Below, one piece after another: positions 9,317 to 15,721 of a DNA stretch of 64,000 nt (the first letter of the stretch is position 1; each line of letters opens with the position of its first letter). The notes under the pieces are model-generated. The model was not told where the DNA came from, did not search any database, and saw only the letters and a program-made list of their open reading frames with translations. The stretch lies in the sequence record LC727697.1. One strand, written 5' to 3'. The position numbers and the translations under genes are program-made.

Positions 9317-9538
9317 TTATCCAAATGCATCGTCCGATTGTGTCGGCTGGCTATACATTTGTCTAACTAACACTAAATGTTCTTCTGTTTCTACTTTACG
9401 CAATTCTCTCATTTTTCTAAGCTTATTTAAATGAGAAAATGTTAGTCTAGGTCTACGTGTGTCTGACTTATGTGCAATTGCACTAGAATCGTCTGCAGGA
9501 TTATAATAACCTTCTGTTATAATATCGTTTATTTTCAT
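9317..9538 (-). CDS. Small head-associated hypothetical protein
   Basis: Start overlaps the portal stop by 1 nt. MKINDIITE N-terminus and basic helix. Confidence 0.65.
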   Translation of the reverse strand: MKINDIITEGYYNPADDSSAIAHKSDTRRPRLTFSHLNKLRKMRELRKVETEEHLVLVRQMYSQPTQSDDAFG

Positions 9539-11253
9539 TATTCTTTCCCAAAGTCTTCTACTGTTTGATCTAAATCAATATCATCGACTATATCGTCATC
9601 ACTAAAGTCAGAACTATCACTAACTGCACTAGTATCAAACTCCCCAACACCAGCTAGCGCAGCCGGTGAAATACCCACTTGTCTCATACCAGCATCAGCT
9701 TTTTTACCACGTTTGTTTTTAAGACTCTGTTCTTCTGCATACATTTTTTCGTTTTCTAGAATTTCAGCTTCTCCCCAACCTAAATAACGTTTTAATGCAA
9801 ACCGCTTACTTATGTAGGGGACATCAGCAATTCCATTAAAAACTGCAACTTGAGCAGAATCCATATCTATTTGTCGATATTTAGCAAAATTTTGTGGCTC
9901 TACAAATGTTATATTAAATATACTATTGTCTATAGTAATGCCACTAAACTTAAGATATAGTTTAAATTCTTTATCTAATGTTTTTACTATCTGGCGTTGA
10001 TGTCTTTTGCATCTTTCACTAAATCTATATTCTTGTATATATGCAGTTCCTACTCTTCCATCATTATATCCTGCTGTACCATCATCGGGCCCTGTAGGCA
10101 GATATGAACTAGGAACTCCTAACGCACGCATCATTTTATTATTAAAATAACGCATATCATCTATTTCGCCTAGATTAGAACCTCCTGGTAAAACATCTAC
10201 TTTCGATCCTCTGCCGTCTGCTGATTGAGCAAAATAATAATCTTCAAGAGTAGAAAGAGGGTTATATGACGAGTCTAGAATATTACTTCCGCCGCCAGTT
10301 TTATTAGGAATCCTTTTTTGTTGTACTTCATATTTAACGCGCTCTAACACTTGCTGAGCTTTGTTAGGAGGCAAGTTACCTGTGTCGATAATAAACACAC
10401 GTCTTTCCGGTGCACGATGAATTCTATATATAAGCATTGCATCTTCAAGCATTTCTTTTTGCTTATATACTTTAAATATAGTCTCTAATTCACTAGTACC
10501 GAATGGCCACGCAGAATTCATACCTTCTGTCATAGAAAAATGAACTATATGCGTTGCATTTATCGGCATAGCTTCGCTGTTAGCTAACGAGCCATTCTGA
10601 CTAGGATTATTTGCAGATGCGTATGGTCCTGCAGGATTTATTCCCATAGTTGCTTGGGGGAAAGCAGATGCTGTGTTTCCGTATCCTATTTGTATTTTAT
10701 TAGTTACATTAGATCCTACTAACTCTGCAGTATTTAAATCGACATCTTTAATGAAATAGGTCTCTATTTCTTTTCCTTTACTTTCGTTAACAATTATTTT
10801 TTCTACTTTGTGCGGGTCTACCCAATATAATTCGTAAGTTTCTGGATCTCTTATAAAGAATTGATCTCCATACTTTATTGTAGATCTAAAAATACCGAAA
10901 AGCCTATCTTCAAACTTATTAAGATGTATCCATCTTTTTAAGCTTTTTGTTAAAATTTTTAATTCTGTTTCGGTAGGTTCTTCTGTAAATTTTATATTTA
11001 ATGGTAATCCAGTTACACCGTCTGGTTGTGTAGAAAACTCTGCTATAGTATCTAATGCAGTGTTTACTTCGTGATCTAGATCCATTTGTTCATATTGAAT
11101 GTACCGCTCCAATCTGTTAGGCGGACCCATATAAACTTCAGGAAGCCATGTGTTATATTTTGAAACAGCAGAAGCATAACCAGATGTATTTTTAGTTTGT
11201 ATAGGCAGCGCTGAATTTGATGCAGGCTTAAAATGTTTTTTCCAACTAGACAT
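9538..11253 (-). CDS. gp20: Portal vertex protein, T4 gp20-like
   Basis: EDAMLIYRIHRAPERRVFIIDTGNLPPNKAQQ, EDYYFAQSADGRGSKVDVLPGGSNLGEIDD and LGVPSSYL motifs. Confidence 0.95.
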   Translation of the reverse strand: MSSWKKHFKPASNSALPIQTKNTSGYASAVSKYNTWLPEVYMGPPNRLERYIQYEQMDLDHEVNTALDTIAEFSTQPDGVTGLPLNIKFTEEPTETELKILTKSLKRWIHLNKFEDRLFGIFRSTIKYGDQFFIRDPETYELYWVDPHKVEKIIVNESKGKEIETYFIKDVDLNTAELVGSNVTNKIQIGYGNTASAFPQATMGINPAGPYASANNPSQNGSLANSEAMPINATHIVHFSMTEGMNSAWPFGTSELETIFKVYKQKEMLEDAMLIYRIHRAPERRVFIIDTGNLPPNKAQQVLERVKYEVQQKRIPNKTGGGSNILDSSYNPLSTLEDYYFAQSADGRGSKVDVLPGGSNLGEIDDMRYFNNKMMRALGVPSSYLPTGPDDGTAGYNDGRVGTAYIQEYRFSERCKRHQRQIVKTLDKEFKLYLKFSGITIDNSIFNITFVEPQNFAKYRQIDMDSAQVAVFNGIADVPYISKRFALKRYLGWGEAEILENEKMYAEEQSLKNKRGKKADAGMRQVGISPAALAGVGEFDTSAVSDSSDFSDDDIVDDIDLDQTVEDFGKE

Positions 11254-11282: not shown

Positions 11283-13679
11283 TTACCTAGTTCTTGTAAA
11301 TCCAGTTTCTCTAGTAGCAGCTAATGCTCTGCGCTGAATATCTACAAGCTCTTGTAACTGTCGTATTTGTTCTTCTTGTAAACGTATAAGTTTATCTGTA
11401 CTTCTATTTAGCATGTCTTGAGAACTCATTCCTGTATTTTCTATAGGCTTTATATTGCTAGTAGGATCTACAGGAGTAGGACTTTGTTTTGCTGCGTCTG
11501 CGACATCTGGCTGAGCTGTAGGAATTATAGCAGGAGCTTTCGGAGTTTCTATTTTACCGTATGCAGATGTTTTAGTAGCAGTAGGTCCAGGCGGTGTATA
11601 TGCAGGTTTATTAGTAGTTTCTACTTTTATAGGTATATCTTGTAGACCCAAGAACTGTTGCAAATTAGTATCACTGATGTATTTACTAAATCCATCTGCT
11701 GCTTCATCAGATACTATACCTAATTTGTTAGCTGCCCATGTAAGGGATTTAAACACAGGATCTATTATACCTTCGCCGGCGCCCGATAAAAAATTCAATG
11801 CAGATTCTATTGCATCGCCGCCTTCCGAAATTGATTGACTTAATCTACCTATTCCATTTGTAAACGATACTGCTAGTGCTGCAAATGCCCCTAATCTTCC
11901 TGCTATAGTTTTTACGGTGCCACCTAATGATGACATAGGTCCTGATGCACCTTTAAGCCACGACGATAACGAAGAAATAACAACACCTTTAAATGTAGTC
12001 ATAATAGCAAGAACGCCAACTACTATAGCAGCACCGGAACTTGTTAAAATATCTCCTATTATTTTAGAATAATTTACATTTATATTTCCTGCTACATCTT
12101 TACTAAATAAACCATTTAGATATTCCATAGCATTGTTAACAAATTTAAATAATTCCGGACCTAATTGTTTACCTAAGTCTTCTGCTGTATTATGAATTGT
12201 TTTTAACATTTCATTTGCATTATCTAATAATTTAGCAAATTCATCAGATTCGAATCCTGCTCTCATTATAGATGATACAAACGTATCTAATACAGCTAAT
12301 GCTCTATTTCTTACATCTTCGACTTTTGCTAAATTTGTAGCTTCTGTATTTTGGATTCCTTCATAATGACCATCCATTTTATCTCTAAGGTCTTTTAATC
12401 CATACGCAGCAGCAGCAACATTACTATCTATTAGTCCACGAGCATCTAGCATAGCAAGTCTACGCATTGTACTTTCTGCAAAACTAGTAGATTTTATAAG
12501 TCGTTTCATTGCATCATCTGCCTGACCGTTAGTTATATTACCAGATTTCAGTCCAGATGATACTGCAATTATTTGTCTAGCTAATTCTCCTTGCCCGGAT
12601 TTTATTAAATCGGCGTATTCTTTGGATGCCATAAAAGACGGAGTATCTTTAAGAGCTACCTTAAACATAGTTTGCAATTGTTCCGGCAAAGCGGCATAAA
12701 TTTGGGCGGCGGCTTCTTTAGAATTTGCGTTAACTGATTCTATTGCTACACGAAAGTCTACATCTTTTAAACTTTCATTCATTTTTGCCTGAAGGTCTTC
12801 TGTAGACATTCTTAATGCAGTAGCAAATGCTTGGGTATCTTTAAGTGCTTTAGATGCAAGGGCAGTCATGTTTACTTGGCGCATTTTATCAAATGTACCC
12901 ATTAAACGTTGAGATTCTAAATATTCTCCTACATAATCTGCTGTTTCTTTTAAAGACATACCTAAGCTATTGCCTTGTCTTTTTAAGCTAGAAGACAAAT
13001 CTACAAACGATTTTATTCCGTATTTTTGTATTGCTAATTCATTGCCTTTTAATACTTCAGATAGTGCAGATGAATTTATACCTAAACCTTTTATGGCATA
13101 CGAAATACCGTCTAAGTTGGTAGATTTAATAATACCAGATGCATCGTCTAATACCGTTCCGAAGTTCCAACCTGATTTATATAAATCTCTAGATAAAGTA
13201 AGTTGCGACGATGCAGCTTGCTTTAATGCAGCATATATACTTCCGCCAACTGCAAAAGATGCCATACTTAAAGTAAATTTTGCTACTGCCTTTGAAGCAG
13301 TACCGACGGCAGTAATAAATGCGCCTATAGTATCTGTATCTAATTTAGATTTCTTACTGTCAGGCGGCAATACGGGAGGTTTGTTTCCCCCTTGCTTTGC
13401 AGATAAAGAATTATCAGATTTTTTCTGTTGTTTTAACGAAGAAGATAATCTATTTAATGCTTCTTTTATTTCAGTGTTATTATCTGTTCTAGATGTATCT
13501 TCGTTAGATCTACGGGTTACCCTAACTAGTTCATCTACTGCATCTTTTAGTTCGTCGTTTTCTCTTGTATTAGATCCATTGAGTTTTTTTAACTCAGATA
13601 CTATTTTATTAAGAGTTTCTTCTCGAGCCCAGCCAGGGACACTAGGATCAACGCCAACAATTCTAATATCTTCTGCCAC
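11283..13679 (-). CDS. Tape-measure-like tail protein
   Basis: 798 aa, Ala/Gly/Leu-rich, helical-looking with hydrophobic stretches, divergent from the hub chaperone gene. Confidence 0.6.
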   Translation of the reverse strand: MAEDIRIVGVDPSVPGWAREETLNKIVSELKKLNGSNTRENDELKDAVDELVRVTRRSNEDTSRTDNNTEIKEALNRLSSSLKQQKKSDNSLSAKQGGNKPPVLPPDSKKSKLDTDTIGAFITAVGTASKAVAKFTLSMASFAVGGSIYAALKQAASSQLTLSRDLYKSGWNFGTVLDDASGIIKSTNLDGISYAIKGLGINSSALSEVLKGNELAIQKYGIKSFVDLSSSLKRQGNSLGMSLKETADYVGEYLESQRLMGTFDKMRQVNMTALASKALKDTQAFATALRMSTEDLQAKMNESLKDVDFRVAIESVNANSKEAAAQIYAALPEQLQTMFKVALKDTPSFMASKEYADLIKSGQGELARQIIAVSSGLKSGNITNGQADDAMKRLIKSTSFAESTMRRLAMLDARGLIDSNVAAAAYGLKDLRDKMDGHYEGIQNTEATNLAKVEDVRNRALAVLDTFVSSIMRAGFESDEFAKLLDNANEMLKTIHNTAEDLGKQLGPELFKFVNNAMEYLNGLFSKDVAGNINVNYSKIIGDILTSSGAAIVVGVLAIMTTFKGVVISSLSSWLKGASGPMSSLGGTVKTIAGRLGAFAALAVSFTNGIGRLSQSISEGGDAIESALNFLSGAGEGIIDPVFKSLTWAANKLGIVSDEAADGFSKYISDTNLQQFLGLQDIPIKVETTNKPAYTPPGPTATKTSAYGKIETPKAPAIIPTAQPDVADAAKQSPTPVDPTSNIKPIENTGMSSQDMLNRSTDKLIRLQEEQIRQLQELVDIQRRALAATRETGFTRTR

Positions 13680-13700
13680 AAGAACCTCTATAAAATGCTA

Positions 13701-13730
13701 TGATAAATACGGTATATAGCATATTTATCA
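13701..13730. promoter_or_regulatory. Pair of late promoter motifs serving the divergent genes (TGATAAATA + at 13701-13709; - at 13722-13730)
   Basis: One motif on each strand in the 69-nt intergenic gap. Confidence 0.65.
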
Positions 13731-13748
13731 AAAGAGCATATACACATT

Positions 13749-14603
13749 ATGAGCAACAAATTACATCAATATTACAGAACATTCAAATCTTATATTCGTT
13801 TGCCCAGCGGAAATTCATTTTATCCATCAAATGTTGTAGAATACACCGATTCTGGAGAACTAGGGGTATATGCTATGACAGGAAAAGATGAAGTATTAAT
13901 AAAAAATCCTGATGCATTAGTGAACGGTGAAGGCTTAAAAGAAGTAATTAAGAGTTGTGTACCGGGAATTAAAGATGTAAATAAACTCTTGATTAATGAC
14001 ATTCATATGATATGTGTTGCTATAAAAGCAGCATCATACGGTAACACAATAGATATTTCTTCTACGTGCCCGCATTGTAATCATAAAAATTTATATGGAA
14101 TAGACTTATTAAATGTTATTAATACGTCTACTTATTTAGAAGATCAATACGTCGTGAATCTTGATAACGGTCTATCTATATTTATTAGACCATATGATTT
14201 TTCAGATAATATGACAGTTGCAAAAACTGCATTAGAACAAGCAAAATTTATTAGAATAATGCAAAGCGATATGTATTCAGATGAAGAAAAACTTTCTGCC
14301 TTTTCTAACACAATAAATGAACTGTCATCATTAAATTTCGAATTAATTGCAAAAACAATAGTTCGTATTGTAGATGAAACTAACGGTATAGATATAGTTA
14401 ATAATACTGCTCAGACACTAGCTGATATAAAAGAATTTATAGCAAATATAGATAGAGCAGATGTTAATAAAATAGATAGTCTTTTAAAAGAAATAAATCA
14501 AGTAGGAGTTAATGGCGACTTTGATGCAGTATGCGACAACTGTAATAAAAGTTTTGTAGTACCTGTAGATTTTAACCCAGTAAGTTTTTTCAGAGAATCC
14601 TAG
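13749..14603 (+). CDS. gp26: Baseplate hub / tail assembly chaperone, T4 gp26-like
   Basis: YIRLPSG..FYP, MTGKDEVLIKNPDAL, AIKAASYG, CPHC and CDNC motifs. Confidence 0.75.
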   Translation: MSNKLHQYYRTFKSYIRLPSGNSFYPSNVVEYTDSGELGVYAMTGKDEVLIKNPDALVNGEGLKEVIKSCVPGIKDVNKLLINDIHMICVAIKAASYGNTIDISSTCPHCNHKNLYGIDLLNVINTSTYLEDQYVVNLDNGLSIFIRPYDFSDNMTVAKTALEQAKFIRIMQSDMYSDEEKLSAFSNTINELSSLNFELIAKTIVRIVDETNGIDIVNNTAQTLADIKEFIANIDRADVNKIDSLLKEINQVGVNGDFDAVCDNCNKSFVVPVDFNPVSFFRES

Positions 14604-14812
14604 TATCGGGAACCCCAGATGATATTAGGAACGTTATACAAGAATATGAACAAGAATCACTGGGATTAGAAGGCGAAATAGTCCAAATATGTGATAAAAT
14701 TAATGGATTTGACTGGCACACTGCTTGGTCTTTATCATATCAAGAGCGGGTACGTCTAGGAGAATTTATTAAACAAAAAATTGAAGCAGAAACAGGTAGA
14801 AGCTTCCTATAA
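14588..14812 (+). CDS. Start-less 74-codon frame reached by -1 frameshift from the gp26-like gene (gp51/GT-like extension)
   Basis: Open -1 frame FQRILVSGTPDDIRN...WHTAWSLSYQERVRL...GRSFL* with no in-frame ATG, GTG or TTG. Slippery T TTT TTC at 14585-14591, and a terminator directly after the stop. Confidence 0.75.
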   Translation, partial: FQRILVSGTPDDIRNVIQEYEQESLGLEGEIVQICDKINGFDWHTAWSLSYQERVRLGEFIKQKIEAETGRSFL

Positions 14813-14845
14813 AAAGAAAGGGACAATTAACGTCCCTTTCTTTTT
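14811..14845. terminator. Bidirectional terminator
   Basis: AAAAAGAAAGGGAC-loop-GTCCCTTTCTTTTT. Confidence 0.85.
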
Positions 14846-15279
14846 GACTTTTTAGAAACTCCTGTGTTAAGTTTCTTTGTTTTAACTAATATACTCTGAT
14901 ATGCACCAGTTTTGTTTTGCTCATTATATATTCTAATTAATCGTTTAACTGAATTTAAATGTTTTTCTGGTATGCGAAGTATTTGTGTTGTATTTGCTAC
15001 TTCCTTAACAACTTCCTTATACATACTAAGTTTCGATTCGCAATGTCTGCAATGCGATTTACCAGATAAATTTCTCTTAGTAGCAATAACATCTTCGTAC
15101 ATTTTAGAATTACATCCTATACAACGTTTTATTTCGTCAGGATGTCTATGCTCTAAAATAAACTGATTAGTAATAAATTTTACAGCAGCGTCAGGATATC
15201 CATCATTTATAAGCTGAGTATTTAAATCATATGCTAAAAATATGAAATCTTCCTCTGTGTAATGTGTGTAATCGTTCAT
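14827..15279 (-). CDS. Hypothetical Zn-finger protein with a basic tail
   Basis: CIGC...CRHC and a Lys/Arg-rich C-terminus. Late motif AGATAAATA at 15312-15320. Confidence 0.6.
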   Translation of the reverse strand: MNDYTHYTEEDFIFLAYDLNTQLINDGYPDAAVKFITNQFILEHRHPDEIKRCIGCNSKMYEDVIATKRNLSGKSHCRHCESKLSMYKEVVKEVANTTQILRIPEKHLNSVKRLIRIYNEQNKTGAYQSILVKTKKLNTGVSKKSKRKGR

Positions 15280-15721
15280 TGATGTATACCTCTATACAAT
15301 TTTTACAATATTATTTATCTAATTAAATCTCTAGTTAATTTTCAATTTCGTTCAGTCGTAGTATGCCATAAAACGTTTATAATTATATAGAGATATTTTA
15401 TAGAATTACCGTAATATACAACGTTAGTAAGTATGTGAACTACAGTTCACATATGTATTTTGTTTATATTCGTTTTCGTAAACTACAACTCATATAAACA
15501 AAATACAAGTTACTAAAGTAACAAAATTAAAGTAATTAAACAAATTTGATATAATTTAAGATTATTTTGTATGTCCAATACACTGCTAGAAGCAGTGTAT
15601 TGATGTAGAATGGCCTAAAATGGCGTGTACTGATTATGACATGAGTGTAAACGAAAGTCATAAACATCTACCCCTTTTCGGGGTAGATGCGTACGACATA
15701 TAATTGACAATTATATTTTTT

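What the first reader, a model, noticed from the sequence alone, without database searches (positions are those of the whole stretch)
13749..14812. Programmed -1 frameshift turns the gp26-like gene into a lambda G/GT-like chaperone pair
Seen: an in-phase slippery heptamer T TTT TTC (14585-14591) sits four codons before the TAG. After a 7-nt spacer comes a 9-bp stem, CCUAGUAUC/GAUAUUAGG (14599-14607 / 14621-14629), with GGG-AA-CCC in the loop. The -1 frame is closed at 14573 and then open for 74 codons with no start codon, ending right at a terminator. Predicted products are 284 aa and about 354 aa. Established: tail assembly chaperones next to tape-measure genes use -1 frameshifts (lambda G/GT), while T4 encodes gp26 and gp51 separately. 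Inference: this links T4 gp26/gp51 to the G/GT system in a jumbo myophage; the gene is divergent from the tape measure here.
Basis: partly seen in the sequence, partly recalled or inferred. Interest (0 to 1): 0.8.

Follow-up and report, generated by a model that had tools for sequence, protein, structure and literature searches.

The report
Conserved -1 frameshift in gp26/gp51-family gene
This phage tail-assembly gene most likely makes a short and a longer protein from one gene by a programmed ribosome slip, and phage T4 appears to make the same two proteins from two separate genes (26 and 51).

Summary
The window comes from a PA5oct-like Pseudomonas jumbo phage. ORF 13749-14603 (284 aa) belongs to Pfam PF12322 (T4 gp26/gp51). 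An in-phase slippery heptamer lies at 14585-14591 and a hairpin starts 6 nt later. The -1 frame then runs 73 codons with no ATG, GTG or TTG and ends at a terminator.

Comparative evidence makes a programmed -1 frameshift very likely. I found the same layout in 28 lineages that share only 25-56% protein identity, including T4-like phages that are not jumbo. The wobble base before the heptamer is always T although the amino acid varies. The -1 peptide is conserved from the shift site onward. The hairpin keeps its pairing through compensatory changes. No in-frame fusion appears among 120 close homologues.

T4 lacks the site. T4 gp26 and gp51 are both full-length PF12322 proteins, and gp51 carries about 48 extra C-terminal residues. 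These align collinearly with the -1 extension (best P 1.9e-5). So gp26 resembles the short product and gp51 the long one.

The likeness to lambda G/GT is one of architecture, not demonstrated homology. No annotation or paper I could search describes this frameshift. No expression data were available.

The parts
13749..14603 (+). ORF0, 284 aa: a gp26/gp51-family (Pfam PF12322 T4_baseplate) baseplate-hub assembly protein, the short product. It has two conserved Cys-x-x-Cys pairs.
   Evidence: Pfam E 2.9e-25, profile positions 16-219 of 219, ending at residue 282. phrog_150 'baseplate hub' E 3.7e-23. AlphaFold2 pLDDT 92.5, pTM 0.87. BFVD fold matches to T4-like baseplate hub assembly proteins down to E 1e-26. 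C107, C110, C262 and C265 are invariant.
14585..14591 (+). Slippery heptamer T TTT TTC in X XXY YYZ phase with ORF0. This is the proposed -1 recoding site, a signal and not a gene break.
   Evidence: The same in-phase heptamer class is present in all 28 lineages examined that have the two-frame layout.
14598..14630 (+). RNA hairpin 6 nt downstream of the heptamer, the candidate frameshift stimulator. The ORF0 stop codon lies in its 5' arm.
   Evidence: MFE -13.8 kcal/mol, z -2.1 to -2.8. Hairpins sit at the same codon-aligned position in 7 relatives, with different sequences and compensatory pair changes.
14591..14812 (+). -1 frame extension: 73 codons plus TAA, with no ATG, GTG or TTG. It is predicted to fold as a three-helix domain and is related to the C-terminal tail of T4 gp51.
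   Evidence: The family alignment is essentially gap-free. All 5 variable sites among near-identical genomes are synonymous in this frame. AlphaFold2 pLDDT 81 with helices at 9-36, 42-46 and 50-68. hhalign to the gp51 family is collinear, with P from 1.9e-5 to 7e-3.
14810..14846 (.). Intrinsic terminator hairpin (15 bp) with T tracts. It starts at the -1 stop codon and is shared with the convergent 150-aa ORF.
   Evidence: One site was found against 0.6 expected from shuffles.
11283..13679 (-). Context: a 798-aa virion protein gene transcribed divergently from ORF0. It is syntenic in nearly all relatives. It is a candidate tape measure protein, unproven.
   Evidence: Synteny of portal, large protein and gp26-like gene. 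Found by virion mass spectrometry in PA5oct (note) and in CBB (29 peptides). The RaK2 record notes a tape-measure similarity. No Pfam, PHROG or PDB match and no match to T4 gp29.
9538..11253 (-). Context: portal protein gene (T4 gp20-like).
   Evidence: phrog_213 E 6.7e-104. RefSeq annotation.

Best explanation
The gene at 13749-14812 is a single recoded gene of the T4 gp26/gp51 family (Pfam PF12322).

Most ribosomes stop at the TAG at 14601-14603 and make a 284-aa protein. This short product corresponds to T4 gp26, which ends at the same motif. A fraction of ribosomes slip back one base on T TTT TTC (14585-14591), helped by the hairpin 6 nt downstream. They continue for 73 codons in the -1 frame and make a protein of about 354 aa. 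Its extra three-helix tail corresponds to the C-terminal tail of T4 gp51.

Both products probably act in assembly of the baseplate hub and tail tube initiation complex, not as major virion parts. The shared body would bind one partner and the tail of the long form a second partner. That is the logic of lambda G/GT.

T4 itself, and at least one metagenomic lineage, make the two forms from two paralogous genes instead.

Shown here: the sequence anatomy, its conservation, family membership, and the collinear similarity to gp51. Inferred: that slippage occurs, its efficiency, and the chaperone mechanism.
For: 1. Anatomy.

2. Conservation of the site.
- 28 lineages have an in-phase slippery heptamer near the ORF0 end: T TTT TTC in 20, T TTT TTT in 3, A AAT TTT in 5.
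- They share 25-56% ORF0 identity with the window, or less for the T4-like phages.
- In each, the -1 frame is open for 57-80 codons and the +1 frame is closed.
- The codon before the T run encodes S, H, N, R, Y, A or D, but its third base is always T.

3. Coding signal.
- The -1 peptide is conserved from the first codon after the heptamer, whereas the frame-0 tails differ in length and sequence.
- The first ATG in the -1 ORF lies anywhere from codon 2 to codon 57, and there is none in the window.
- All 5 variable sites in the extension among PA5oct-like genomes are synonymous in the -1 frame.

4. Hairpin. Eight members of the PA5oct-proximal clade fold a hairpin 5-6 nt after the heptamer, with z from -1.8 to -4.0. 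Pairs switch between A-U and G-C, and between U-A and C-G.

5. No in-frame version among close homologues.
- The 120 best ORF0 homologues are 234-301 aa long.
- An exhaustive profile search with the extension gives 235 hits, and the best 150 are 40-167 aa long.

6. Link to T4.
- gp26 residues 1-206 and gp51 residues 1-201 each cover the whole PF12322 profile (E 8.8e-64 and 3.9e-52).
- All gp51 homologues carry an extra C-terminal domain, recorded as PF28602 in the precomputed annotation.
- That tail aligns collinearly with the extension in six comparisons: P 1.9e-5 with probability 78% for the cyanophage extension, P 4.6e-4 for the jumbo-clade profile, and P 5.8e-4, 0.003, 0.005 and 0.007 for the others.

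7. A natural in-frame form exists. P0320 (338 aa, present in 32 blocks of the contig collection) has PF12322 plus the extension domain (hhalign probability 96.9%) and no T run at the junction. It sits beside a paralogue that lacks the tail.

8. Chaperone role.
- Current records name T4 gp26 'baseplate hub assembly chaperone'.
- The window's gene product carries no virion mass-spectrometry note in PA5oct, and its CBB homologue is not in the part of the CBB virion table I read.
- 11 of 57 homologues weakly match the PHROG of P1 PmgB. That gene lies next to the P1 tape measure gene and its loss gives tail-less particles.
Against: - No expression evidence was available: no peptide, ribosome footprint or protein band.
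- In the Rak2-like branch the downstream structure is weak or absent, with z near 0. The stimulator is therefore not universal.
- The T run could also support transcriptional slippage, which would give the same long protein.
- The similarity of the jumbo-clade extension to the gp51 tail is only moderately significant (hhalign probabilities 10-33%).
- The G/GT analogy lacks homology support. Foldseek to the HK97 tail assembly chaperone gave E 1.9, and tail-assembly-chaperone PHROG hits do not recur among homologues.
- The GenBank record for CBB calls the homologue a 'structural protein'.
Confidence: 0.85

Rival explanations
1. The long product is made by transcriptional slippage, not ribosomal slippage. 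RNA polymerase changes the length of the U run in a fraction of transcripts, and these are then read straight through.
For: The site is a homopolymeric run of 6-7 T in 23 of 28 lineages. The protein made would be the same as by ribosomal slippage.
Against: - Five lineages have only 5 T but keep a canonical in-phase A AAT TTT heptamer.
- The run is always placed in X XXY YYZ phase through a constrained wobble T, rather than simply as two TTT codons.
- A covarying hairpin sits at the 5-6 nt spacing typical of ribosomal stimulators.
- From my own knowledge, known bacterial transcriptional slippage sites usually need longer runs.
Confidence: 0.08
2. The -1 ORF is an independent small gene, as annotated in most relatives. 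It would be translated by its own initiation or by termination-reinitiation coupling, giving a free peptide of about 40-70 aa.
For: Annotators call a separate small ORF in 12 relatives. In 121Q, Serratia BF and fHe-Yen9-04 the annotated start overlaps the ORF0 stop. PHROGs has a family for it, phrog_18291.
Against: - The window's -1 ORF has no ATG, GTG or TTG at all, and its closest relative has its first ATG at codon 54 of 73.
- Start positions are scattered and mostly lack Shine-Dalgarno-like sequence.
- Conservation begins at the heptamer, upstream of every annotated start.
- The small ORF is in the -1 frame in every case.
- In-frame natural fusions exist: P0320 and T4 gp51.
Confidence: 0.05
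3. It is an artefact or decay: a homopolymer sequencing error, or a recent frameshift mutation that has left a dying 3' end.
For: Homopolymer runs are error-prone in some sequencing chemistries.
Against: Eleven independent PA5oct-like genomes and 27 other lineages have the same layout. Some of these lineages were assembled on dozens of contigs. The downstream frame shows purifying selection. The heptamer class is conserved across families.
Confidence: 0.01

Closest known systems
Lambda G/GT and the conserved -1 frameshift of tail assembly chaperone genes in long-tailed phages (Xu, Hendrix and Duda 2004; cited in PMC9024508)
   Same: - A canonical X XXY YYZ site near the 3' end of a tail-assembly gene.
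- A major short product and a minor long product that share the same N-terminal body.
- A downstream -1 ORF with no start of its own.
- The product is probably absent from virions.
- The gene lies next to a large candidate tape-measure gene.
   Different: - No detectable sequence or fold homology to tail assembly chaperone families.
- The body is larger (about 280 aa, with a four-Cys site) and the extension smaller (about 70 aa).
- The gene is transcribed divergently from the candidate tape measure gene and is not between tube and tape-measure genes.
- Its T4 relatives act in hub assembly, not in tube or tape-measure chaperoning as currently described.
T4 gp26 and gp51 (baseplate hub assembly proteins)
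   Same: - ORF0, gp26 and gp51 all belong to PF12322.
- gp26 ends a few residues after the same Phe-Phe motif where the window's heptamer lies.
- gp51 continues in frame into a tail of about 48 aa that aligns with the -1 extension.
- Genes 26 and 51 are adjacent and divergent, next to genes 27-28-29.
   Different: - T4 uses two genes and has no slippery site. Its two Phe codons are not slippery, and the -1 frame is closed until 7 nt before the stop.
- T4 gene 26 is followed by gene 25.
- Sequence identity to the window protein is low, so the relationship is visible only at profile level.
P1 PmgB (phrog_1854)
   Same: - Weak but collinear profile matches from 11 of 57 ORF0 homologues (best E 6.4e-5).
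- pmgB lies immediately upstream of the P1 tape measure gene sit.
- Its deletion gives no tails, and the protein is not detected in virions. The authors propose it is a tape-measure chaperone.
   Different: The window protein itself does not reach significance against this family. I did not examine whether pmgB has a frameshift.

Membership tests
Canonical -1 programmed ribosomal frameshift (tandem slippage) | An X XXY YYZ heptamer in phase with the upstream frame | tested here: met
   T TTT TTC at 14585-14591. In phase in all 28 lineages with the two-frame layout.
Canonical -1 programmed ribosomal frameshift (tandem slippage) | An overlapping -1 ORF that is conserved as protein and cannot be explained by its own start codon | tested here: met
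   No ATG, GTG or TTG in the window. Conservation begins at the site. All near-relative substitutions are synonymous in the -1 frame.
Canonical -1 programmed ribosomal frameshift (tandem slippage) | A stimulatory RNA structure 5-9 nt downstream | tested here: inconclusive
   Present and covarying in the 8-member PA5oct-proximal clade, and in the XacN1 group. Weak or absent in Rak2-like phages. No Rfam match.
Canonical -1 programmed ribosomal frameshift (tandem slippage) | The trans-frame protein is observed | not testable with these tools
   No proteomic or ribosome-profiling data could be analysed here.
Pfam PF12322 T4_baseplate (T4 gp26/gp51 family) | Profile match above the curated threshold over the whole domain | tested here: met
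   89.7 bits against a cut-off of 24.5, profile positions 16-219 of 219. T4 gp26 and gp51 match the same profile.
Pfam PF12322 T4_baseplate (T4 gp26/gp51 family) | A fold shared with T4-like hub assembly proteins | tested here: met
   Foldseek against BFVD: 67 matches with E up to 1e-3, top TM-scores 0.86-0.88, named baseplate hub assembly protein or chaperone.
T4 gp51 long form (PF12322 plus C-terminal tail) | A C-terminal tail homologous to the gp51 tail | tested here: inconclusive
   Six collinear hhalign matches to gp51 residues about 206-250. The best is P 1.9e-5 with probability 78% (cyanophage extension). The jumbo-clade profile gives P 4.6e-4 with probability 33%. The local Pfam copy appears to lack PF28602, since gp51 itself did not hit it, so I could not scan against it.
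Lambda G/GT-type tail assembly chaperones | Sequence or structural homology to known tail assembly chaperone families | tested here: not met
   No Pfam or NCBIfam hit. Single weak PHROG hits (E 0.011 and 0.3) do not recur among 57 homologues. Foldseek to the HK97 chaperone 2ob9 gave E 1.9.
Lambda G/GT-type tail assembly chaperones | The gene lies between the tail tube gene and the tape measure gene on the same strand | tested here: not met
   The gene is transcribed divergently from the 798-aa neighbour, which lies next to the portal gene. The tail sheath gene is more than 15 kb away.
Lambda G/GT-type tail assembly chaperones | Two products share an N-terminal body through a 3'-proximal -1 frameshift | tested here: met
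   Met at the sequence level only.
Lambda G/GT-type tail assembly chaperones | Needed for tail assembly, binds tape measure and tube proteins, and is absent from virions | not testable with these tools
   Indirect evidence only: no virion mass-spectrometry note for the PA5oct gene, and the homologue is not in the part of the CBB virion table I read.

The most novel reading that the evidence does not exclude
A single recoded gene is the usual, and probably ancestral, way in which T4-superfamily myoviruses make both a gp26-like and a gp51-like hub assembly protein. These include jumbo Rak2-like, PA5oct-like and Atu_ph07-like phages, cyanomyoviruses, Pootjesviridae and some Straboviridae. T4's genes 26 and 51 would then be a duplicated, 'resolved' version of that gene. 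On this reading the conserved tail-assembly frameshift of long-tailed phages extends to the T4 lineage, which has looked like an exception. It also gives gp26/gp51 a G/GT-like division of labour: a shared body, with the long form's tail recruiting a second partner.
Probability: 0.5. Interest if true: 0.85.

Novelty: new variant of a known kind. Interest (0 to 1): 0.72.

Why it matters
- How T4 gp26 and gp51 act in hub assembly is still poorly defined. A published discussion calls them chaperones or cofactors only as a proposal. Showing that most relatives encode them as nested products of one gene suggests fixed-ratio co-production and a shared body with a differential tail. That is a concrete hypothesis for their mechanism.
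- It corrects annotation in the records I examined. The small 'hypothetical protein' downstream of the hub gene is probably not a gene of its own. The same applies to the small ORF labelled gp51 or 'hub assembly catalyst' in phages such as OLIVR5. About a hundred jumbo-phage records hold this subfamily, and many T4-like records may be affected.
- It offers natural comparators for how recoded genes evolve: frameshifting lineages, two heptamer types, and two independent two-gene solutions.

Tried and rejected
- tblastn with the extension finds nothing outside PA5oct-like phages. It is too short and divergent.
- The search for related loci with the ORF0 alignment failed because there was no conserved stretch to back-translate.
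- Single-sequence hhalign of the extension gave probabilities below 1% against T4 gp51, gp25 and gp28. The gp51 register later proved right once family alignments were used. gp25 and gp28 remain negative.
- Searches of the PDB sequence set and Foldseek against the PDB were not significant for ORF0 or the extension.
- Tests of whether the 798-aa neighbour is the tape measure gave only coiled-coil noise. These used Pfam, PHROGs, PDB profile search and hhalign against T4 gp29.
- Rfam gave nothing near its thresholds.
- NCBIfam gave nothing for either piece.
- Seven literature searches for a described gp26/gp51 frameshift found none. Subscription journals are not covered, so prior description cannot be excluded.
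Natural in-frame relatives (T4 gp51 and P0320) were used instead.

Full report
**1. Source and observation**

The window matches Pseudomonas jumbo phage sp. 30-2 at 100% over the 2.5 kb I tested, and ten other PA5oct-like (Wroclawvirus) genome records at 98.7-99.6%.

- ORF0 (13749-14603, 284 aa) ends in TAG.
- The heptamer T TTT TTC (14585-14591) is in X XXY YYZ phase.
- The -1 frame opens at 14576 and runs to the TAA at 14810-14812. That is 73 codons after the shift site, with no ATG, GTG or TTG.
- The +1 frame closes after 6 codons.
- RNAfold predicts a hairpin at 14598-14630, 6 nt after the heptamer. It has a 10-bp stem with one G-U pair plus three G-C pairs, at -13.8 kcal/mol and z -2.1 to -2.8.
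- A 15-bp terminator hairpin starts at the -1 stop codon.
- Of 57 ORFs of at least 100 aa in the window, only this one combines an in-phase 3' heptamer with a long open -1 frame.
- RefSeq and GenBank annotate only the 284-aa 'baseplate hub' and leave the extension unannotated.

**2. The gene**

- ORF0 is a full-length member of Pfam PF12322 (E 2.9e-25) and of phrog_150 'baseplate hub'.
- AlphaFold2 with 57 homologues gives a confident model (pLDDT 92.5, pTM 0.87).
- The model has no significant PDB neighbour.
- It has 67 BFVD neighbours with E up to 1e-3. Most named ones are T4-like baseplate hub assembly proteins or chaperones.
- Two Cys-x-x-Cys pairs are invariant, which suggests a zinc site.
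- The extension is predicted as three helices (pLDDT 81) with no PDB neighbour.

**3. Comparative test of the frameshift**

tblastn with ORF0 finds 97 phage records. They are PA5oct-like, Rak2-like (RaK2, 121Q, GAP32, CBB, Serratia BF and others), Atu_ph07, XacN1-like, XaC1 and a Vibrio phage. I fetched 14 of these, plus 10 metagenomic relatives found by protein search.

- Every one has an in-phase slippery heptamer at the conserved Phe-Phe motif near the ORF0 end.
- In every one the -1 frame is open for 69-80 codons from the shift and the +1 frame is closed.
- Every annotated downstream 'hypothetical protein' lies in the -1 frame.
- The residue before the T run varies (S, H, N, R, Y, A, D), but its wobble base is always T, and the first Phe codon is always TTT.
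- Five related metagenomic lineages have a shorter T run and instead carry an in-phase A AAT TTT one codon upstream. One of these proteins is indexed in 43 blocks of the contig collection and another in 40.
- The -1 peptides align over about 70 residues almost without gaps, starting at the first codon after the heptamer. The frame-0 tails vary in length from 1 to 11 residues and are unrelated across clades.
- The first ATG of the -1 ORF lies anywhere between codon 2 and codon 57.
- Among four PA5oct-like genomes, the 5 variable sites in the extension are all synonymous in the -1 frame. All 11 PA5oct-like records encode an identical extension.
- None of the 120 best ORF0 homologues is longer than 301 aa.
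- An exhaustive profile search with the extension returns 235 small proteins. The best 150 are 40-167 aa long.

**4. Stimulator**

In the PA5oct-proximal clade (the window, L018, L019 and L026-L030), all eight sequences fold a hairpin at the same codon-aligned position, 5-6 nt after the heptamer. Energies are -9.7 to -15.4 kcal/mol and z is -1.8 to -4.0. The arm sequences differ, and pairs switch between A-U and G-C and between U-A and C-G. The XacN1 group has a strong hairpin at the same spacing (z about -4.4). Most Rak2-like phages do not have one. The hairpin is therefore clade-specific support and not a universal feature.

**5. Beyond jumbo phages, and the T4 link**

Using T4 gp26 as a tblastn query, I sampled distant T4-like phages.

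- Synechococcus phage S-WAM1, Agrobacterium phage OLIVR5 and Cronobacter phage LPCS28 (a Straboviridae phage) all have the in-phase T TTT TTC and a -1 ORF running 57-65 codons from the shift site.
- In OLIVR5 the small -1 ORF is annotated 'baseplate hub assembly catalyst', which is the gp51 name.
- A published comparison table lists such a 'gp51' next to gp26 in phage DLP6. It scores about 29-49% identity to the cyanophage and PhiM12 entries in its row, but about 5-23% to T4 and the other enteric-phage entries where a value is given.
- T4 itself and an Aeromonas phage lack the site. In both, gene 25 follows gene 26.
- T4 gp26 (residues 1-206) and gp51 (residues 1-201) each match the entire PF12322 profile, so they are paralogues.
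- gp51 and all 92 near-full-length homologues (of 94 found) carry an additional C-terminal domain, PF28602 in the precomputed annotation.
- In the gp51 family alignment the chain continues in frame from the end of the PF12322 domain into a helical tail. That tail shares a conserved aromatic position and a Pro-x-Glu-Arg motif with the extension family.
- Profile comparisons always place the extension on gp51 residues about 206-250. The values are P 1.9e-5 with probability 78% (S-WAM1 extension), then P 4.6e-4, 5.8e-4, 0.003, 0.005 and 0.007.
- A metagenomic relative, P0320 (338 aa), carries PF12322 and the extension domain in one frame (hhalign probability 96.9%). It has no T run at the junction. 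It sits in tandem with a 336-aa paralogue that lacks the tail, beside the syntenic 793-aa protein and portal genes.
- So at least two lineages (T4 and this one) make the long and short forms from two genes, while the other sampled lineages use one recoded gene.

**6. Function**

- Current records name T4 gp26 a hub assembly chaperone. A published discussion treats gp26 and gp51 as proposed chaperones or cofactors.
- The PA5oct gene product has no virion mass-spectrometry note, while its neighbours do.
- In the part of the CBB virion table I read, the 722-aa neighbour has 29 peptides and the gp26-like protein is not listed. The GenBank record nevertheless calls it 'structural protein'.
- Eleven of 57 homologues weakly match the PHROG of P1 PmgB. 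That is a tail-essential, non-virion protein encoded next to the P1 tape measure gene.
- The 798-aa neighbour is of a size that could fit a tape measure. MIJ3 has a tail of about 140 nm, and T4 gp29 has 590 aa for a tail of about 100 nm (my own knowledge). Nothing else identifies it.
- The G/GT comparison is therefore one of architecture and probable role, not of family membership.

**7. Novelty**

None of the records I inspected annotates a frameshift here, and seven full-text searches found no description of one. Some elements were already implicit. Pfam groups gp26 and gp51 together, and cyanophage-type 'gp51' small ORFs are annotated next to gp26.
Noticed in passing
window 13689-13696: TATAAAAT about 50 nt upstream of the ORF0 start. 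It resembles the T4 late-promoter box (my own knowledge), and the phage encodes a late sigma factor. No sigma-70-like promoter was found upstream of ORF0.
   Followed up: no
window 13000-15500: The 2.5-kb query has two matching places in each of the 11 PA5oct-like genomes. This implies a second, partial copy or a repeat of some part of the stretch elsewhere in these genomes.
   Followed up: no
L035:3639-4601: An IS605 OrfB/TnpB-like gene lies between the 793-aa protein gene and the tandem PF12322 paralogues in a metagenomic relative.
   Followed up: no
L016:2489-3364 (Yersinia phage fHe-Yen9-04): The gp26-like gene is annotated as a 'Lead, cadmium, zinc and mercury transporting ATPase'. This is probably a mis-annotation driven by its Cys-x-x-Cys motifs.
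   Followed up: no
window 14590-14721 (minus strand): The PAC2 record annotates a 43-aa minus-strand ORF at the position corresponding to window 14590-14721, inside the extension region. It is probably spurious, given the -1 plus-strand coding signal.
   Followed up: partly
L017:7405-7805 (T4 genes 26/25): T4 gene 25 starts on the last base of the gene 26 stop codon and is in the -1 frame relative to gene 26. It has its own ATG, and there is no slippery site. The Aeromonas phage has the same layout.
   Followed up: yes
L005 (CBB gp250): The GenBank and RefSeq records call the CBB homologue a 'structural protein', but the part of the published virion mass-spectrometry table I read goes from CBB_247 to CBB_251 without it. 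'CBB_250' in the paper's text looks like a slip for CBB_240.
   Followed up: partly
BFVD matches to the ORF0 model: Several fold relatives are much longer (384-596 aa). They include proteins of Erwinia phage Special G, Klebsiella phage Eowyn and Ralstonia phage phiRSL1. The PF12322-like body may therefore carry other in-frame C-terminal domains in other myovirus groups.
   Followed up: no
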